Source: Sphyrna mokarran (Eukaryota). From it: a stretch of 64,000 bases of DNA. Made by a program: the position numbers and the translations under genes. The stretch covers positions 8,680,001 through 8,744,000 of the forward strand of contig JAGIQG010000040.1 of assembly GCA_024679065.1 (NCBI GenBank), read 5' to 3'. This document shows, piece after piece, positions 11,675-43,694 of the stretch (position 1 is the first letter of the stretch; every line of letters begins with the position of its first letter). The notes below the pieces were generated by a model. That model ran no database searches. It saw nothing but the letters and a program-made list of their open reading frames with translations, and was not told the origin of the DNA.

Positions 11675-12603
11675 AGCAGAATTAGGCCACTCGGCCCATC
11701 GAGTCCGCTCCGCCATTCCATCATGGCTGATATTTTACTCATCCCCCATTCTCCTGCCTTTTACCCGTAACCCAGATCCCCTTATAAATCAAGAACCTAT
11801 CTATCTCTGTCTTAAAGACACTCAATGACCTGGCCCTCCACAGCTTTCTACAGCAAAGAGTTCCACACATTTCCAACTCTCTGGCTGAAGGAATTCCTTC
11901 TCATCTCTTTTTTAAAGGACCATTCCTTTAGCCTGAGATTGTGCCCTTTAGTTCTAGTTTTTCTTACTAGTGGAAACATATTCTCCATGTCCACTCCATC
12001 CGGGCCTCACAGTATCGTGTAAGTTTCAGTGAGATCTCCTCTCATCCTTGTAACCACAACAAGTACAGACCCAGAGTCCTCAACCTGTTCCTTATATTTA
12101 AGCTCTTCATTCCAGGAATCATTCTTGTGAACCTCCTCAGGACCCTTTCCAAGACTGGCACATCCTAATCTCTCAGTTCACACATGCCTGTCGATCGCAG
12201 GATCAGCGCAGACGGAAAATAGACAATGGTTGATTGGTTTACTTGCCGATTTTACTATCACCCGCTACCTTTCTTACAGCCCCAAAGTCCCTCTGCAGCA
12301 ACGACTATCAAACACAGCTCTGAACCACTAGTTGCGATGGAGACAAAAGGATTAGGAACAGCAGTAAGCCATCTGGCCCCCCGATCCTGCCCTGCCATCC
12401 AATAAGATCATGGCTAATAATTTTTAATGGACTCAGTTTCACTTACCCGCCCGCTCACCATAATCCTTAATTACATTACTTTTCAAAAATCTATCTATCC
12501 TTGCCTTAAAAAAAATCAATGAGGTAGCCTCAACGACTTCACTGGGCTGGGAATTCCACATGTTCGCAACCCTTTGTGAAGAAGTTCGTCCTCGACTCAG
12601 TCC
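11675..12603 (-). mobile_element. Two CR1 3' fragments
   Basis: Antisense ORF2 ends (SQRVANMWNS...) with CR1 3' UTRs at about 11680 and 12350. Confidence 0.75.
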
Positions 12604-13378
12604 TAAGCTTTTTCCTAGGATGGACTCGAATAGCACGAGGGGTCACGGCCTCAGGGTGAGGGGGGTAAGGTATAATTTGGATGCTAGAGGGAGTTTTTTC
12701 ACACAGAGGGTGGTGGGCGTATGGAATGCACTGCCCAGTAAAGTGGTGGAGGCAGGTACTCTGGAGTTATTTAAGAAATACTTAGATGGGCACATGAACA
12801 GAATGGGAATGGAGGGGTATAGAAAACTGATTTAAAGTAGGGATCATGAGCCTTGGGAGTCCCTGGGAAGTGTGTAAATAGACGACGATATTCATGTACT
12901 TGTTTTTATCCTACAGGTGCTTTGGTCCACCTTGTTGTCTAACAAGGGGCATACACGCGATGGGTCATGAGAGGACTGCTCTTGAATCTTTTTCGAGAGT
13001 ACCCTAGTGCTTCACATTGTTAGTGTATGCTTGACCTGGACCGTCTGATGGGCAACACGACAGCTCAGTGACTATCGCTGTGCTGTGCAGATACATGGAT
13101 TTGGGCCTGTGTCGGTGGGAGTTTGCTCATTCTCCCCGTGCTTGCGTGGGTTTTCTCCAGGAGCTCCGGTTTCCTCCCACATCCTAAAGATGTGCTCTTA
13201 GGTTAATTGGCAAAATAAATTCTCCCTAAATTGTCTCAAATTTGGTTTTTAATCCATAGATCTATAAACATGGACAGGGGTCGTGGGTAGAGGTGGGAAC
13301 ATCGGGGTGGCGGCGTGGGCTCGTTGGGCCGAAGGGCCTGTTTCCCATGCTGTTTTGTTCTTTGTTCTTTGTCCTTTG
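12604..13378 (+). mobile_element. Long-3'UTR CR1, copy A
   Basis: ORF2 end (TRGHGLRVRG...FFTQRVVGVWNALP...RKLI*), a ~540-nt 3' UTR and a (TTCTTTG)n tail. Near-identical to copies C and D. Confidence 0.88.
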
Positions 13379-13659
13379 GTCTGGCGGCAACTCTAAGGAG
13401 ACAAAAGAGCTAACGTTTCGGGTCCAGACGACCCTTTGTCAAAACTGAGATTTTCGGAAATACGGCTCTAGGGGTTGGGAGGTGATTCAGCATGTTAAGG
13501 GATTGGAGGATGTTACATAGATAGGGAGGGGGTGTAGGGACTGAAGCAGGTTACAGAGGTCTGGAGGGATGTAAAAGGCTGCAGATGGTTACAGAGATAG
13601 GGAGGGTGTGTTGGAGCTGGAGGAGGTTACAGACATAGGGAAAGGTAAGGGTAAGGGTT

Positions 13660-14671: not shown

Positions 14672-15615
14672 TCACTGTGCTTTCCAACATAATCCAGGAA
14701 ATGAATGTGTGATGTCTCGTGTTTGAACGCGTTTGACAATCATCATCAGAGGATATTTAATACAGTTCCCTAACTCCTTTCTGAATTGACTCTGAGTAAC
14801 AGCATAAATAAAAGTGTTTGTGCAGCAGCTCAGGAGCTGGAGCATGAAACCAATTTCAGGTACAAATGTGGGCACATGAACTGAATATCCCAAGTAATCC
14901 AATCGTCTCACTATCGAACAGGACATAAACAATGCCCACAGCAGCATGAAATTCCCTGAGATTAGAAATAGTAAGACCATGGATTTCCGTCGCCTTCCCA
15001 TTTCTGGGTCATTGGAATTCTCGCCACTGCCCCGAATCTGGAGTCTCATGCGAGCCCTGCTGGCCAATAAGACGCTTCTGACCGTCAATACATTGAACAA
15101 TAAAATCAATACAAATGGTATAAACGGTGTTAAAATGTAATGCGTAAATTCAACAAGAGCCCAGGCCAGTGAGTGAGATGCATGAGGCAACACGTTGCAA
15201 AACCAAGGTGTGTTTGAAAGCCAGTACTTACTTGCATACAGAAAATACCAAAAAATGTTCTTCAAACAGCTCAGCACCGTCACTGTGACGAGAACCACAG
15301 TTGCTGTTTCTTCAGTGCAGTATTTAGCTTTTAGCTTCTGACAACTAATGGCCACAAATCGATCAAAGGTGAAAGTGACAGTGAACCAGACAGAACAGTC
15401 AGTGACGGCGTAAAGGACAACTGCGTGGATGTTACACACTCGAATGTACAACAGGAAAGTAAATTGCTCTCGATACACAATGGGAATATGCCTCAGGATT
15501 AGGTCAATGATGATTATCAGTAGATCAGCCGCTGCCATGGCAACCAGATAACGAATCACACACTTGGAGAGGCCACACTTTCCGCGAGACAAGATCACTA
15601 TCGTCAGCGTATTAA
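14672..15615 (-). CDS. GPR139-like class A GPCR, exon 2 (most of the 7TM)
   Basis: Acceptor ttctcctgcacacag|TT AAT ACG, then an open frame VNTLTIVILSRGKCGLSKCV...AMAAADLL...FTFDRFVAISC...LSCCTNTFIYAVTQ to the stop at 14672. Hydrophobic segments and DRF/NTFIY motifs are typical of elasmobranch 'probable GPCR 139' paralogues. Confidence 0.88.
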
Positions 15616-16055: not shown

Positions 16056-17725
16056 GCAAGAACAAAGAGCAACACAGCACAGGAAACAGGCCCTTCAGCC
16101 CAACGAGCCCGCACCGCCGTCCTAACGTCTTAATGACATATCCATGAATTTAGGCTATGCCTATTGTGGAAGATTCCCATATAGGGACCAATATAGGGAC
16201 AATTTGTTACCCAATCAGCCTAAGACCACATTTTTGGGATGTGGGAGCACCCGGAGAAAACCCACACAACCACGGGGAGAACGCGCAAACTCCCGCAGAC
16301 ACAGGCCCAAATCTATGTGTCTGCACAGCAACAGCGATAATCTCTGAGCTGTCACGTTGCCCATCAGATGGTCCAGTTTAAGCATACACTAACGACTTGA
16401 AGCACTAGGCCACTCCTGAAGCAACATCCAAGAGCAGCCCTCGCACGACCTGCCGAATGCATGCACCTTGTTGGTCAACAAGGTGGACCGAATTGCCTGT
16501 GGAAACAAATAAGATATTTAGACAGTCCTGCTATATCCCTCTATCTGCAAACCGCTCATGTGGCTGTCCAAGAGAGCCTTAAACAACCCTAGCGTGCCTG
16601 CTCCCACCACCTTACTCGGCAGTGCATTCCACACCCCCACTACCCTTTGTGTGAAAAACTGCCCTCTAATATTCGTCTTATACATAGCCCCCTCACCCTA
16701 AGGCCGTGACCCCTCGTTCTATCCATTTCTAATGGTGGAAAAAGCTTACCACCATTTACTCTATCTATACCCCTTATAATCTTATATACCTCTAATAGAT
16801 CCCCTCTCAGCCGACGTCTTTCAAGGGAAAACAACCCCAGTGTGTTCAATCTTTCCTCGTAAGACAGCCCTTCCATACCAGGCAGCATCCTGGTAAATCT
16901 CCTCTGCACTCTCTCCAAGGCCTCCACATCCTTCCGGTAGTACGGCGACCAGAACTGGACGCAGTACTCCAAGTGAGGCCTAACCAACGTTCTAAACACT
17001 TGCAACATCAGACTCCTACTCTCGTATTCTATGCCCCTTCCTATGAAGGCTAACATACCATACGCTTTCTTTATCACATTCTCCACCTGTACTAACATCT
17101 TCAGAGACTTGTAAACCTGCACCCCCAGGTCTCTCTGCGTCTCTATACTCCGGATAGTTTTACCTTTTATCCTATAACTCCCCTCTACATTATTCTGGTC
17201 AAAATGCATCACCTCGCATTTATCCAGATTAAATTCCATTTGCCATCTATCTGCCCAATCTACCAGCCTATCTATGTCCTGTTGTATTGCCTGGCACTGC
17301 TCCTCAGTACCCGTCAATCCAAGCATCTTAGTGTCATCAGCAAATTTGCTGATTACACCACCTACCCCCTCTTCCAAGTCATTTATATAAACCACAAATA
17401 GAAGAGGTCCTAGTACTGAGCCCTGTGGCACACCACTAGTGACAGACCTCCTGTTGGAAAAAGAGCCTTCCACTACTACCCGCTGTCTCCTCCTCCCAAG
17501 CCAGTTCTCAACCCATCTACATACCTGGCCCTGTATCCCATGCGCCTTAACCTTTTCTATCAGCCTATCATGAGGAACCTTGTCAAACGCCTTACTGAAA
17601 TCCATGTAGACGACATCAACGGCTTGTCCTTCATCAACCGTTTTTGTCACCTCTTCAAAAAATTCCACTAGATTCGTAAGGCGCGAGCTCCCCTTAACGA
17701 AGCCATGCTGCGTATCCCTGATCAG
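16056..17725 (-). mobile_element. Long-3'UTR CR1, copy B (diverged subfamily), in the GPCR intron
   Basis: RT frame in ORF 16640-17797 (QHGFVKG, YMDFSKAFD, FADD), and a 3' UTR homologous to copy A. It splits an older LINE (LDTIQ...|IHSLHHRR..VCAIYKMHC, about 15940-16055 and 17726-18115). Confidence 0.9.
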
Positions 17726-18119
17726 ATCGCAGCAAACATCCACTCCCTCCACCACCGACGCACAATAGTAGCAGTGTGTGCTATTTACAAGATGCACTGC
17801 AGCAATTCACCAAAGATCCTTAGACAGCACCTTCAAAGCCCACGACTGCTTCCCTTTAGAAGGACAAAGGCAGCAGATACATGGGAACACTACCAACTGC
17901 AAGTCCCATTCTAAGCCACTCACCATCCTGAATTGGAAATATATCGGCTATTCCATTGCAGTCACCGGATCAAACTCCTGGAATTCCCTCTATAATGGTA
18001 TTATGGGTTAACCCACAGAACACGGACTGCAGTGATTCAAGAAGGCAGCTCACCACCACACTCTCAAGGACCTACGAGGAATGGGCAATAAATGCTGGCC
18101 AGTCAGCGATGCCCATATA

Positions 18120-18870
18120 GAAACATGGAACCATAGAACATTACAGCACAGAAACAAGCCTTTTGGCTACTCTTGGTTGTGCCAAACCATTTTTCTGCCT
18201 AGTCCAATTCAACTACACCTGGACCATATCCCTCCACACCTCTCTAATTCATGTACCTGTCTAAGTTTATCTTAAATGATAAAAGTGAGACCACATTTAC
18301 CACTTCACCTGGCAGCTCGTTCCACACTCCACCAGTTCCTATGTGAAGAAGCCCCCTTCCCCTCTCAATATTCCCTTTAAATTTTTCCCCCTTCACCCTT
18401 AATCCATGCCCTCTGGTTTTTTTCTCCCTTAGCCTCAGTGGAAAAAGCCTGCTTGCATTCGCTCTATCTATACCCAACGTAATTTTATATACCTCTATCA
18501 AATCGCCCCTCATTCTTCAATGCGCCAGGGAATGAAATCCTATCCTATTCAATCGCTTTCTCTGTAACTCAGCTTCTCAAATCCTGGCAACATCTTCTGA
18601 ACTTTCTCTGATCTCGTTCAACCTTATTCATATCCTTTCTGTAATTAGATGAGTAGAACTGCACACAATACTCTAAATTCGGCCTCAGCAGCGTTTTATA
18701 CAACTTCACCATAACATTTCAAGTTTATACTTAATACTTTGATTTCTCAAGGCCAATGTTCCAAAAATACTCTTTACAACCCTATCTACCCGTGACACCA
18801 ATTTTAGGAATTATGTTTCTGTACTTCCACATCCCTCTGTTCTACTGCACTCTTCAATATCCCACCATAT
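18120..18870 (-). mobile_element. CR1 3' fragment
   Basis: MRGDLIEVYKI...TRGHGLRV on the minus strand. Confidence 0.8.
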
Positions 18871-19299
18871 TCCTGGAATGAATATAAAACAAATGGCCAA
18901 GATATTATGCATTTCTGAACAGTATCTCGAAATAACCCTCTTTGCCCAATTTTTGTCATGTCTATTTCTTCCACTTTTTGTGCAAACCATTCCAAATTAT
19001 ATCCCCATTTGGTCAGAATACGGTGAGTATGCGCAGTATGATTCACTGTGCCAGACTGCCCACTGGAAGATTACAGTCTTAACAATGTAACAACTCTCAC
19101 AAAATTCCATGCTGGGGAAATTGAAAATCATGGTTAACTAAAAGTCATGAATGAATAAATAGTAAATCTTCCAATCCAGGCACGGAATAACATTAACTCA
19201 GAGGTGATTAGCGTTATTGTCTCACAGTGCCAGGGACCCGGGTTTGATTCACGACTCAGGTCACTGTTTGTGTGGAGTCTCCAAATTCTCCCCATGTTT

Positions 19300-20620
19300 C
19301 ATTTGATTTATTATTGCCACATGTATTAACATACGTGAAAAGTATTGTTTCTTGCGCTATACAAACAAAACATACTGTTCATAGAGAAAAAAGGAGAGAG
19401 TGCAAAATATACCGTTATAGTTATAGCTAGAGTGGACAGAAAGATCAAATTAATGCGAGGTAGATCCACTCAAAAGTCTGATAGCAGCAGGGAAGAAACT
19501 GTTCTTGAGTCAGTCGGTATGTGACCTCATTTGTATCTAATTTTTTCCTGAAGGAAGAAGGTGGAAGACAGAATGCTGGGGGATCGTGGGGTTCTCAGTT
19601 ATGCTGACTGCTCTTCCCGAGGCAGCCGGAAGTCTAGACAGAGTCAATGGATGAGAGGCTGGTTTGCATTATGGATTGGACTGCATTCACGACCTTTTGT
19701 AGTTCCTTGTGGTTTGGGGCAGAACAAGAGTCATACCATGCTGTGATACAATCAGAAAGAATGTTTTCTACGGTACATCTGGAAAAATTGCTGAGAGTCA
19801 TAGTTGCCAAGCCAAATTTCACAGAACATAGAACATAGAACATAGAACATTACAGCACAGAACAGGCCCTTCGGCCTTCGATGTTGTGCCGACCAAAATA
19901 AAAAGCAATGCCCCTCCAAACTAAACCATTCCCTTCTCTTCCATATACTTATCAATTAACCTCTTAAACGCCACCAAACTTGGCGCATCTACAACAGCTG
20001 CAGGCAGGGCATTCCACTCCCTAATCACTCTTTGAGTAAAGAACCTACCTCTGATATCCGTCCTATAACTCATACCCCTTAATTTAAAGCTGTGTCCCCT
20101 CGTGCTAGCTTTCTCCATCCTAGGAAAAAGGCTATCACTGTCCACCCTATCTAAACCTCTAATCATCTTATATGCTTCAATAAGATCCCCTCTTAGCCGC
20201 CTCCTTTCTAACGAAAACAACCTCAAATCCTTCAACCTCTCTTCATAGGACCTGCCCTCCATACCAGGCAACATCCTGGTAAACCTCCTCTGTACCCTCT
20301 CCAATGCCTCCACATCTTTCTTATAATGTGGCAATATAATTTCCTTAGTCTTCCGAGAAAGTAAAGGCGTTGGTGGGCTTTCTTTAACTATAAGTGTCTG
20401 TGTGGGGGGAGCAGGACATTTGTTGGTGATCTGGACTACTAAAAACTTGAAGGTCTAGACTCTTTCTACTTCGTCCCCGTTGAAGTAGACATGGGCATGT
20501 TCTCCTTTATGTTTCCTGAAGTCGATGACACTCACCTTCCTTTCCTTGACATTGGGGGAGAGATTACTGTCGCTGCATCAATTTATTAGATTCACTATCT
20601 CATCCCTGAACTCTTTCTCA
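19300..20620 (-). mobile_element. Rex1/Babar-like LINE fragment
   Basis: TLSNFSRCTVENILSDCITAWY...KELQKVVNAVQSI motif; interrupted by a CR1. Confidence 0.7.
19822..20335 (-). mobile_element. Young CR1 3' fragment
   Basis: PHYKKDVEALERVQRRFTRMLPG... open to the stop; (TTCTATG)4 tail. Confidence 0.92.
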
Positions 20621-21029
20621 TCTGTGTGGGTTTCTTCCGGGTGCTCCAGTTTTTCTCCCACAGTCATAATGACCTGTTTTTTAGGTGCATTGGCCATTCT
20701 AAATTCTTCCACAGTGTAACTGAACAGGCGCCAGAGTGTGGTGAAACTAACTTCATTGCAGTGTTAATATGAACCTACTTGTGACACTAATAAATAAATC
20801 TATAAAACTTAAAATCATTAAAACCAGGAATAGTCACACGATTAGAGACTGCGTGTGTGAGAAATATTTACAGCCTAACCAATCTGAATCATTGTTATCT
20901 ACACCACATATCTGCTCAGTAAGACTTGTGCAATGACGTAATTCACTGTATGCTGCCAGAATTATTTTTTTTTAAAGACCCTCAGTATTTTCAAAATGTA
21001 TAGACATTATTTGAAATCATTTAAAGTCT

Positions 21030-21330
21030 AATGTTTATTTGTTAATACCACAAATAGGCTTATATTAACAATGCAATGAATTTACTGTGAAAACCCCGTA
21101 TTAGCCACACTCCAGCACCTGTTCGGGTACACTGAGGGAGAATTTAGCATGGCCAATGCAATCTAACCAGTACATCCTTTGGGCTGCAGATGGAAACCGG
21201 AGCTCCCGGAGGAAACCCACACAGACACGGGGAGAATGTGCAAACTCGTCAGAGACAGTGACCCAAACCAGAATCGAACCCAGGTCCCTGTGAGGCAGCA
21301 ATTCTTGCCGCTGTGCCACACCAGCAACAC
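21030..21330 (-). mobile_element. HE1-like V-SINE
   Basis: A/B boxes (gtggcacagcgg..ggttcgattc), V-domain and tail. Confidence 0.8.
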
Positions 21331-21464
21331 TGCTTTACACAAAATGATCTTACCTTCAATTACTTTCAGCATTGTTAAGTTAGCAGCGTGAAAAAAATGG
21401 AAGAGCAGGAGGCATGGGTTAAGATTCCACGTTGTGCTGAACCCTGCCTCCTGCAGTAACCTAC

Positions 21465-22935: not shown

Positions 22936-23573
22936 TCGTCGTCTTTCATTTAAAGGGCTAATGTTCAGTTAAGAGGTAAAGTTCAGTTGAGAGTTTATGA
23001 GTTGTAATGAATTTCATCAGGCAGTTGAGGTTAGCCCGCTGGACGGAGTAGTTCAGGGGTGGCTTTCCATACACACCGCCTCCCTTTCCACCCCTGCCAA
23101 CCTCAACTCGGCCGAACATCTGTAAGGTGTAACTCTCGTACTTAATTACAGGCATAGGACAGCCCCCACCCCCATCTCCGGCTAGCATTGGAAATAACCT
23201 GGGAGGGGATGCCCTGGAAAGCTGCAGATAATCGATAATCTTTATCCCCAGCGTAATGGAATCGTTTGTTATATTATTGCGTGAAATTAATTGCTGTTCT
23301 TCCTGAGAACAACAGTAGAGTTCCCACATCTTTAAGAAAGGGGATTTTATTTGAAGACGCTGCTACGGTTAATTGCTTAAATGTCCAGCACCATTCAAGA
23401 CTGCATGTGGCAGAACTGTGATGTTAGATCCTACCTGTAAAAATTCGGATCAGAGTGATTGTGCAATATATACATTGACATGTATTTGTGCAATATTAAT
23501 TTAAACAATGTGTTATAATTCATTATAATCATAGACAGGACCCATTCTAACATACGTACATATGAACAGAATG

Positions 23574-43632: not shown

Positions 43633-43694
43633 AGTTTTTATGCGAGTGTGTGTCACCGTGATATTGAGCACAGTGACATCCTCATACAAAAACC
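43633..43694 (+). other. IGHD: DH1 segment (coding ATATTGAG, 43661-43668) with 5' 12-RSS and abnormal 3' RSS
   Basis: AGTTTTTAT-12nt-CACCGTG | ATATTGAG | CACAGTG-10nt(ACATCCTCAT)-ACAAAAACC. Confidence 0.88.

What the first reader, a model, noticed from the sequence alone, without database searches (positions are those of the whole stretch)
12924..13042. Conserved ~120-nt multi-stem RNA fold in the 3' UTR of a CR1 lineage
Seen: four copies (A 12924-13042 +, B 16370-16489 -, C 23750-23870 +, D 62583-62702 +) fit one fold. P1 is GGUCCA/UGGACC and closes a 3-way junction. P2 is the hairpin CCUUGUU/AACAAGG, P3 is GCAUACAC/GUGUAUGC, P4 is GCGAUG/CAUUGU, and the apical P5 is UGCUCUUGAA/UUCGAGAGUA. 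Differences between copies mostly keep the pairing: P5 3' arm GAGAG in A versus AGGAG in B (12 bp in B); P2 UCUUGUU/AACGAGG in C; P4 ACGAUG/CGUCGU in C; P3 GCAUGCAU in B. Loops and the sequence upstream diverge freely between subfamilies A/C/D and B. Established: CR1 3' UTRs are normally short with one small terminal stem-loop, like the other CR1s in this window. Inference: this is an uncharacterised functional RNA module (stability, export, RNP packaging, translation control or self-cleavage). Caveat: many changes are transitions, which G-U pairs tolerate by chance.
Basis: partly seen in the sequence, partly recalled or inferred. Interest (0 to 1): 0.85.

Follow-up and report, generated by a model that had tools for sequence, protein, structure and literature searches.

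The report
Structured RNA domain in shark CR1 tail
A very abundant jumping gene (a CR1 LINE) of a cartilaginous fish carries, just after its protein-coding part, a 120-letter stretch that folds into a stable Y-shaped RNA; the fold is real and looks mildly protected by selection, but its function is untested.

Summary
Along copy A only the 12924-13043 window is a stability outlier. No Rfam family or tRNA matches.

The domain lies 88 nt (A, D) or 28 nt (B) after the ORF2 stop. It ends 9 nt before a decayed tRNA/V-SINE body, and a normal CR1 tail follows about 265 nt further on. Other CR1s in the window have 3' UTRs of about 95 nt.

Raw reads put the family at roughly tens of thousands of copies. 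Contigs of a second species hold the fold.

The covariation claim is not supported: 0 of 45 pairs change on both sides. The evidence for constraint is only suggestive:
- Transversions between subfamilies are 3-4 of 90 in stems and 6-7 of 30 in loops (p about 0.006, or 0.02-0.035 without the apical loop).
- Shared G-U pairs outnumber A-C pairs 5 to 0.
- The neighbouring spacer and post-V segments are not conserved.

A coding stretch of copy B folds just as stably (z -6.92), so stability alone proves nothing.

Best reading (0.4): a cis-acting structural domain of the LINE transcript. The main rival (0.35) is a passenger relic. The scan noted this same module in other windows of this genome.

The parts
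12924..13042 (+). Copy A of the fold. P1 12924-12929/13037-13042; P2 12930-12936/12941-12947; P3 12949-12956/13023-13030; P4 12957-12962/13015-13020; P5 12977-12986/12992-13001.
   Evidence: MFE -50.1 kcal/mol, z -5.55. It is the only outlier window along the element (z -6.2). Seven letters are private to this copy against the family majority.
16370..16489 (-). Copy B of the fold, from the divergent subfamily. The apical helix is 14 bp and the apical loop has no T-run.
   Evidence: MFE -55.6 kcal/mol, z -4.73. Identity to A/C/D is 0.78-0.80. It has 9 G-U and 0 A-C pairs.
23750..23870 (+). Copy C of the fold.
   Evidence: MFE -47.2 kcal/mol, z -4.32. Best covariance-model score, 133 bits.
62583..62702 (+). 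Copy D of the fold. P1 is weakened by a G-to-T change.
   Evidence: MFE -42.4 kcal/mol, z -2.84.
12599..12835 (+). 3' end of CR1 ORF2 in copy A, with the stop codon at 12833-12835.
   Evidence: Translation ends ...GYRKLI*. tblastn aligns it to another CR1 ORF2 of the window.
12836..12898 (+). Spacer present in A, C and D and absent from B.
   Evidence: Alignment A1.
12899..12923 (+). Pyrimidine-rich tract ending in CAG (12899-12916), followed by 7 nt before P1. A similar tract sits before B's fold (about 16514-16497, minus strand).
   Evidence: Read directly. It resembles a splice acceptor; no evidence of use was obtained.
13052..13230 (+). Decayed tRNA-like head (B-box region missing) plus V-SINE core, embedded in the LINE 3' UTR.
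   Evidence: Aligns with free tRNA-derived SINE copies of the window. ARAGORN finds no tRNA.
13309..13380 (+). CR1 3' tail and short microsatellite; this is the end of the element.
   Evidence: Homologous to the tails of other CR1s. Read depth falls from about 27,000 to about 1,100 after 13380.

Best explanation
The 120-nt segment is a genuine RNA structural domain of the sense transcript of one CR1 LINE lineage. That lineage has a UTR of about 540 nt: ORF2 stop, a variable spacer, a pyrimidine tract, this domain, a captured and decayed V-SINE, and the normal CR1 tail.

The four copies in the window are dead insertions. The constraint acted on the master elements. The pairing of P1-P4 and the sequence of the distal internal-loop/P5 region were kept while neighbouring UTR pieces were lost or replaced.

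Most likely it works in cis on the LINE RNA as a protein-binding scaffold that helps the transcript survive or be packaged into its RNP. CR1 transcripts end without a poly(A) tail, so such help is plausible.

Shown: the fold, its strand specificity, its discreteness, its abundance, and its presence in a second subfamily and a second species. Inferred: selection on pairing. Pure inference: the molecular role.
For: - Sense-strand folds have z -5.55, -4.73, -4.32 and -2.84. Antisense folds have z -2.57, -0.48, -1.98 and -0.29, with 15-26 kcal/mol less stability.
- Of 24 windows scanned along copy A, only 12924-13043 is an outlier (z -6.2; the others run from -2.1 to +1.35).
- The fold copies rank 3rd, 4th and 9th among distinct loci in 12,726 strand-windows of the whole 64 kb.
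- B versus A/C/D differences are 16-18% in stems and 32-36% in loops.
- Transversions are 3-4 of 90 in stems against 6-7 of 29-30 in loops, Fisher p 0.005-0.008. Without the apical loop, p is 0.019-0.035.
- Pairs shared by at least 3 of 4 copies include 5 G-U and 0 A-C (one-sided p 0.03).
- Conservation between subfamilies is mosaic: spacer absent in B, post-V segment 0.47-0.50 identity, fold 0.78-0.80, ORF end 0.71-0.73.
- About 23,000-31,000 read depth over the fold from 1.9 Gb of raw genomic reads. Contigs of organism D cover 12916-13058 with 9-19 differences, while its depth over the ORF end and spacer is 0.
Against: - No pair changes on both sides: 0 of 45 and 0 of 39. Shuffles reach the observed pairing in 326 of 500 cases.
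- All the statistics rest on effectively one between-subfamily comparison, because B is a single copy. Without the apical loop, the all-difference contrast between stems and loops is not significant (p 0.14-0.40).
- A polarised simulation also gave low p-values for comparisons within A/C/D, which shows that test is biased, so I do not rely on it.
- A coding stretch of copy B (17321-17440, minus strand) folds with z -6.92, so high stability occurs in this element without any special claim.
- The neighbouring tRNA-like/V segment is better conserved than the fold.
- No RNA evidence was obtained. The one 'RNA?' run is a guess and consists of contigs.
Confidence: 0.4

Rival explanations
1. Passenger relic. 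The self-complementary segment arose once, either by an inverted duplication or by capture of a piece of some structured RNA or host transcript together with the pyrimidine-CAG tract. It is carried along only because it lies between the ORF and the tail that the reverse transcriptase needs. The fold forms but does nothing for the element.
For: There are no compensatory changes. Within A/C/D, stems and loops decay alike. Equally strong folds occur in coding sequence. The fold is not the best-conserved part of the UTR. The statistical signals are around p 0.01-0.03 and come from one comparison.
Against: Other non-essential UTR parts were lost or replaced between the same two subfamilies (spacer absent, post-V 0.47-0.50), while the fold kept 42-44 of 45 pairs in every copy. 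There is an excess of G-U over A-C on the transcribed strand. Transversions are depleted in stems.
Confidence: 0.35
2. Double-stranded RNA hairpin that the host processes. The 84-nt P3-P5 arm would be a substrate for Drosha/Dicer or ADAR, so the module matters as a source or target of small RNAs rather than for the LINE itself.
For: It is a long, nearly continuous hairpin with many G-U pairs on the sense strand and occurs in tens of thousands of genomic copies. One paper reports that V-SINEs in 3' UTRs are miRNA binding sites in fish (passage seen in PMC5499810).
Against: No miRNA family of Rfam matches the fold, even at E up to 10. No small-RNA data were available. Among positions with variants, A>G changes (32 places) do not exceed G>A (82) or C>T (65).
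Confidence: 0.08
3. Processing or exonuclease-stalling boundary. The three-way junction stops 5'-to-3' decay, or marks a cut, and leaves a SINE-like RNA (fold, V body and tail) that the CR1 enzyme can copy. This rival includes the reader's self-cleavage idea.
For: Contigs of three runs start at 12924-12925 (records 4, 9 and 18). One contig joins a CR1 tail to 12915. Depth rises from about 22,700 to about 26,900 across that boundary.
Against: Those contig ends are equally explained by the subfamilies diverging just upstream of P1. No loose-end cluster at 12924 appears among the listed raw-read loose ends, and no place is listed where many molecules begin or end. No ribozyme model matches. None of the four window copies starts at the fold.
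Confidence: 0.07

Closest known systems
3' terminal stem-loop of stringent-type LINEs (CR1/L2 clade, e.g. eel UnaL2), recognised by the element's reverse transcriptase and shared with partner SINEs
   Same: Both are cis RNA structures in the 3' UTR of a LINE of the same broad clade. This element also has such a tail (13309-13380). Sources: passage in PMC5786205; abstract of PMC1636434 seen in a search listing.
   Different: The fold lies about 265 nt upstream of the tail and about 340 nt from the 3' end. It is 120 nt long with a three-way junction. It is absent from the other CR1s and from the free SINE copies of the window.
R2 element 3' UTR RNA (a multi-helix domain that binds the R2 protein to start reverse transcription)
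   Same: Both are multi-helix 3' UTR domains of a non-LTR retrotransposon in which pairing is kept better than sequence. This description of R2 is recalled, not tested here.
   Different: The R2 domain is the priming site at the 3' end. Here a separate CR1 tail occupies that place. There is no sequence or Rfam relation.
Conserved 3' UTR stem-loop proposed for human L1 and Alu
   Same: It is a computationally found UTR hairpin proposed to aid retrotransposition (abstract of PMC5135761, seen in a search listing).
   Different: It belongs to a different clade with relaxed poly(A)-dependent recognition, and it is a simple hairpin.
V-SINE highly conserved domain
   Same: It is the immediate neighbour in the same UTR and is co-propagated with the fold. 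Its long conservation is likewise unexplained (passages in PMC5499810 and PMC5786205).
   Different: The V segment shows no exceptional folding (z between -1.1 and +0.9). The fold is not part of the free V-SINE copies in the window.

Membership tests
Any described RNA family (Rfam 15) | Match to a covariance model at the gathering score, or at least a low E-value | tested here: not met
   There were 0 matches at gathering score over the whole window. With E up to 10 over 12800-13480, the only two weak hits lie in the tail and flank (13347-13419); none lies on the fold.
Self-cleaving ribozymes (hammerhead, HDV-like, twister and others in Rfam) | Conserved catalytic core recognised by the family model | tested here: not met
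   No ribozyme model matched.
Self-cleaving ribozymes | RNA ends piling up at one site | not testable with these tools
   The runs laid were DNA reads or contigs. Table 6 lists no such places, but these data cannot show RNA ends.
CR1/L2-type terminal RT-recognition stem-loop | Sits at the extreme 3' end next to the microsatellite and is shared with other CR1s and partner SINEs | tested here: not met
   The fold ends at 13042 and the element ends near 13380. The tail at 13309-13380 is the part shared with other CR1s.
SINE head derived from tRNA, 5S or 7SL RNA | Similarity to the parent small RNA, and no internal Pol III terminator | tested here: not met
   ARAGORN finds no tRNA and Rfam finds nothing. 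The apical loop carries runs of 5-9 T in A, C and D, though not in B. That T-runs act as Pol III terminators is recalled knowledge.
Structured RNA under purifying selection (general criteria) | Compensatory double substitutions in helices | tested here: not met
   0 of 45 pairs and 0 of 39 pairs. Power is very low with only 4 sequences.
Structured RNA under purifying selection (general criteria) | Stems change less than loops, and transversions are depleted in stems | tested here: met
   For B versus A/C/D, transversions are 3-4 of 90 in stems and 6-7 of 29-30 in loops, p 0.005-0.008, or p 0.019-0.035 without the apical loop. This is effectively one comparison.
Structured RNA under purifying selection (general criteria) | Structure specific to the transcribed strand | tested here: met
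   Sense z -2.84 to -5.55 against antisense z -0.29 to -2.57. Shared G-U pairs 5 against A-C 0.
pre-miRNA | Discrete small RNAs from both arms; match to a miRNA family | not testable with these tools
   No miRNA model matched the fold. No small-RNA data could be reached.

The most novel reading that the evidence does not exclude
The pyrimidine-CAG tract, the Y-shaped domain and the V-domain form one portable RNA cassette. It moves between LINE lineages by template switching or splicing. It gives its carrier an advantage, for example an exonuclease-resistant or RNP-nucleating 5' cap for the UTR. This would help explain both the huge copy number of this CR1 lineage and the deep conservation of the V-domain. 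An unchecked note of this scan (s1-887730) says the same cassette also sits in an R2 element of this genome.
Probability: 0.1. Interest if true: 0.8.

Novelty: new variant of a known kind. Interest (0 to 1): 0.45.

Why it matters
Structured 3' UTR RNAs are how stringent LINEs are recognised by their own enzymes, but they are known only at the very 3' end. A second internal domain, in a lineage that also swallowed a V-SINE and reached tens of thousands of copies, would be a handle on two questions. One is what makes a LINE lineage win in elasmobranch genomes, where CR1-group elements cover 22-34% of the genome (passage in PMC13343379). The other is why SINE core domains persist. The question is cheap to settle, because the genome itself holds enough copies for a proper covariation test.

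Tried and rejected
Attempts to find more copies outside the window all failed:
- Two exact-pattern scans of metagenome contigs, two of bacterial/archaeal genome contigs and one of viral contigs gave 0 hits each.
- A protein search with the 56-aa ORF that happens to span the fold in copy D found no candidate.
- A search with copy B's RT ORF found only CR1 relatives at 67% identity or less.
- A search with copy A's C-terminal 78 aa found 7 short ENA proteins (P0121 at 92%, P0126 at 97%).

Read laying printed only 40 of 277 variant positions, so a per-position profile of stems against loops across the family could not be made.

A simulation that mutates one copy towards another gave low p-values also within A/C/D. 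It is biased by reversions of private damage, so I dropped it as evidence.

A possible loop-junction tertiary contact (P2 loop with the strand between P3 and P1) fits A, C and D by eye, but B's changes break it; I rejected it.

I rejected a Pol III SINE-head origin (no small-RNA match; T-runs in the loop) and a coding role. The ORF over the fold exists only in D, and B lacks the ATG.

Literature: Ogiwara et al. 2002 on V-SINEs is not held, so what I say of HE1/HER1 and V-SINE anatomy is recalled. No paper in the library contains either of two 24-letter strings of the fold. Word searches on V-SINE/HE1, HER1/elasmobranch SINEs, and CR1/UTR/structure/shark showed no description of this domain. 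Repbase and Dfam could not be searched, and supplements were closed and not asked for, so a deposited consensus of this lineage may exist.

Full report
WHAT IS THERE. They are not isolated motifs. Each lies inside the 3' end of a CR1-type LINE copy, and the four copies align from the end of ORF2 to a CR1 tail with a short microsatellite.

In copy A the ORF2 frame ends ...GYRKLI with a stop at 12833-12835. After the stop come:
- a 63-nt spacer;
- a pyrimidine-rich tract ending in CAG (12899-12916);
- 7 nt, then the fold (12924-13042);
- 9 nt, then a decayed tRNA-like head and V-SINE core (about 13052-13230; it aligns with free tRNA-derived SINEs of the window);
- a segment of about 80 nt;
- the CR1 tail (13309-13380).

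Copy B, on the minus strand, belongs to a diverged subfamily. It has 385 codons of RT ORF upstream, lacks the spacer, and starts its fold 28 nt after the stop.

IS THE FOLD MORE THAN CHANCE? Yes.
- Each copy's MFE structure on the LINE sense strand reproduces P1-P5. Energies run from -42 to -56 kcal/mol, z is -5.55, -4.73, -4.32 and -2.84, and 0 of 200 dinucleotide shuffles do as well.
- The reverse complements are 15-26 kcal/mol weaker, with z -2.57, -0.48, -1.98 and -0.29.
- In 120-nt windows slid along copy A, only 12924-13043 stands out (z -6.2). The 23 other windows lie between -2.1 and +1.35.
- In a GC-corrected MFE scan of all 6,363 window positions on both strands, copies B, A and C rank 3rd, 4th and 9th among distinct loci.

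A caution comes from the same scan. Rank 1 is a stretch inside copy B's RT coding region (17321-17440, minus strand; z -6.92). Exceptional stability by itself therefore does not prove a dedicated RNA function.

IS IT A KNOWN RNA? Nothing says so. Rfam 15 gives no match at gathering score in the window. Nothing matches the fold at E up to 10, and ARAGORN finds no tRNA. A covariance model of the four copies finds only those four in the window with filters off.

COVARIATION.
- On the 4-row alignment, 95.0% of 180 pair cells are standard pairs, against 33-48% with slid partners. However, 26 of 45 pairs never vary, 14 vary on one side only, 5 contain unpaired cells, and none changes on both sides. 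Column shuffles reach the observed pairing in 326 of 500 trials.
- RNAalifold agrees: 39 pairs, 0 compensatory, covariation term -1.88.
- Within the A/C/D subfamily, stems and loops differ equally (0.09-0.12 against 0.10-0.13). That is the expected pattern for dead copies decaying neutrally after insertion.
- The reads confirm this decay. Seven letters of copy A's fold are private against the family majority, and most are CpG-type transitions.

SIGNS OF CONSTRAINT IN THE MASTERS. The informative comparison is B against A/C/D.
- Stems differ by 16-18% and loops by 32-36%.
- Transitions are equally frequent in both, but transversions are 3-4 of 90 in stems against 6-7 of 29-30 in loops (Fisher p 0.005-0.008).
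- Dropping the hard-to-align apical loop leaves p 0.019-0.035 for transversions and no significance for all differences together (p 0.14-0.40).
- Pairs shared by at least three copies include 5 G-U and no A-C (one-sided p 0.03). Per copy, G-U against A-C counts are 6/2, 9/0, 8/1 and 10/2. A DNA palindrome decaying neutrally should give equal numbers of each.
- By region, B against A/C/D identity is 0.71-0.73 for the ORF end, 0.78-0.80 for the fold, 0.88-0.90 for the tRNA-like part, 0.83-0.87 for the V core, 0.47-0.50 for the post-V segment and 0.81-0.86 for the tail. The spacer is missing in B.

So the UTR is a mosaic of kept and discarded pieces, and the fold is among the kept ones, though it is not the best kept. 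All of this rests on one diverged copy, so I call it suggestive. A polarised simulation that looked much stronger is biased, because it also 'detects' signal within A/C/D. I discount it.

ABUNDANCE AND SPREAD.
- Parts of copy A's 3' end are held by 20 listed runs from 16 studies and a dozen coded organisms.
- I laid about 1.9 Gb of raw genomic reads of the same species label (X23) on 12760-13560 at 80% likeness or better. Summed depth is 23,000-31,000 over the fold, about 17,600-21,300 over the ORF end, and up to 53,700 over the tail.
- If the genome is 3-7 Gb, this means some 40,000-100,000 copies.
- Contigs of organism D cover 12916-13058 with 9-19 differences per 112-126 nt, and they carry the family-majority letters at copy A's private sites. 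Organism D's depth over the ORF end and spacer (12760-12894) is 0.
- Contigs in three runs begin at 12924-12925. I take this as a sign that P1 marks a sharp homology boundary, because the subfamilies differ just upstream.
- No RNA evidence was obtained. X4 is only guessed to be RNA and consists of contigs.

MECHANISM. The data fit a domain of the LINE sense transcript whose helices were kept in the master elements. In B against A/C/D, P3/P4 vary in sequence but mostly not in pairing. The distal region (5' side columns 40-63 and 3' side columns 76-93 of alignment A2) is nearly invariant, with 1 of 24 and 2 of 18 columns differing, read. This is the usual look of a supporting stem that presents a specific protein-binding surface.

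My best guess (0.4) is a cis-acting scaffold for stability or RNP assembly of a transcript that has no poly(A) tail. The role itself is pure inference. The rivals are:
- a functionless passenger relic (0.35);
- a host-processed dsRNA hairpin (0.08);
- a processing or exonuclease-stalling boundary that yields a SINE-like sub-RNA, including self-cleavage (0.07).

COMPARISON WITH THE KNOWN. The domain works most like the structured 3' UTR elements of non-LTR retrotransposons. It is not the CR1/L2 terminal stem-loop, because the element has its own tail elsewhere. It is also not any Rfam family. The papers I could see do not describe it: passages of PMC5786205, PMC5499810 and PMC13343379; listings or abstracts of PMC1636434 and PMC5135761. 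Two 24-letter strings of the fold occur in no held paper.

EARLIER NOTES. This scan's first readers noted the same module in other windows of this genome (s1-886597, s1-887215, s1-887762). They also noted the acceptor-like tract (s1-887222) and the V-SINE body (s1-887254) in this window. One note claims the cassette also occurs in an R2 element (s1-887730). I could not test that claim.

VERDICT. This is a real, discrete, sense-specific RNA fold of a hyper-abundant CR1 lineage. Covariation is not shown, constraint is suggestive, and function is unknown. I rate it of moderate interest. It is easily decidable from the genome itself.

Noticed in passing
window 17321-17440 (-): A 120-nt stretch inside copy B's RT coding region folds on the sense strand with -50.3 kcal/mol and z -6.92. 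It is the top outlier of the whole window. I did not check whether it is conserved in other CR1 copies.
   Followed up: partly
window 12899-12916 (+); about 16514-16497 (-); 62558-62575 region (+): A pyrimidine tract ending in CAG, resembling a 3' splice acceptor, is kept 7 nt upstream of the fold in A, D and the diverged B, although the rest of the spacer is not shared. No evidence of use was obtained.
   Followed up: partly
window 23697-23745 (+): Copy C has an insertion of about 42 nt with a tandemly repeated AT-rich unit exactly between the pyrimidine tract and the fold. It destroys the CAG.
   Followed up: no
window 13052-13110 and 16360-16300 (-): The tRNA-like head embedded in the LINE keeps an A-box-like stretch but lacks the B-box region present in free SINE copies such as 21120-21335 (-). 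This segment is the best-conserved part of the UTR between the subfamilies (0.88-0.90).
   Followed up: partly
window 13309 boundary: About 10,000 raw reads match from 13308/13309 onward but carry a different sequence before it, one that resembles copy B's post-V segment (loose ends). The tail is therefore shared by at least two UTR variants that differ in the post-V segment.
   Followed up: no
window 13489-13560 (+): The flank downstream of copy A is another repeat. It is modest in organism A but has very high contig depth in organism D (27,000-106,000), with many 'goes back' joints that suggest a tandem G-rich unit.
   Followed up: no
window 14672-15598 (-): An intronless 308-aa ORF lies between copies A and B. 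By eye its translation looks like a seven-helix membrane receptor. It was not searched.
   Followed up: no
window 54448-54897 and 55657-56295 (+): These ORFs have translations that look like immunoglobulin constant domains by eye. Another first-reader note mentions recombination signals at 43669-43694, so the window seems to lie in an antigen-receptor locus.
   Followed up: no
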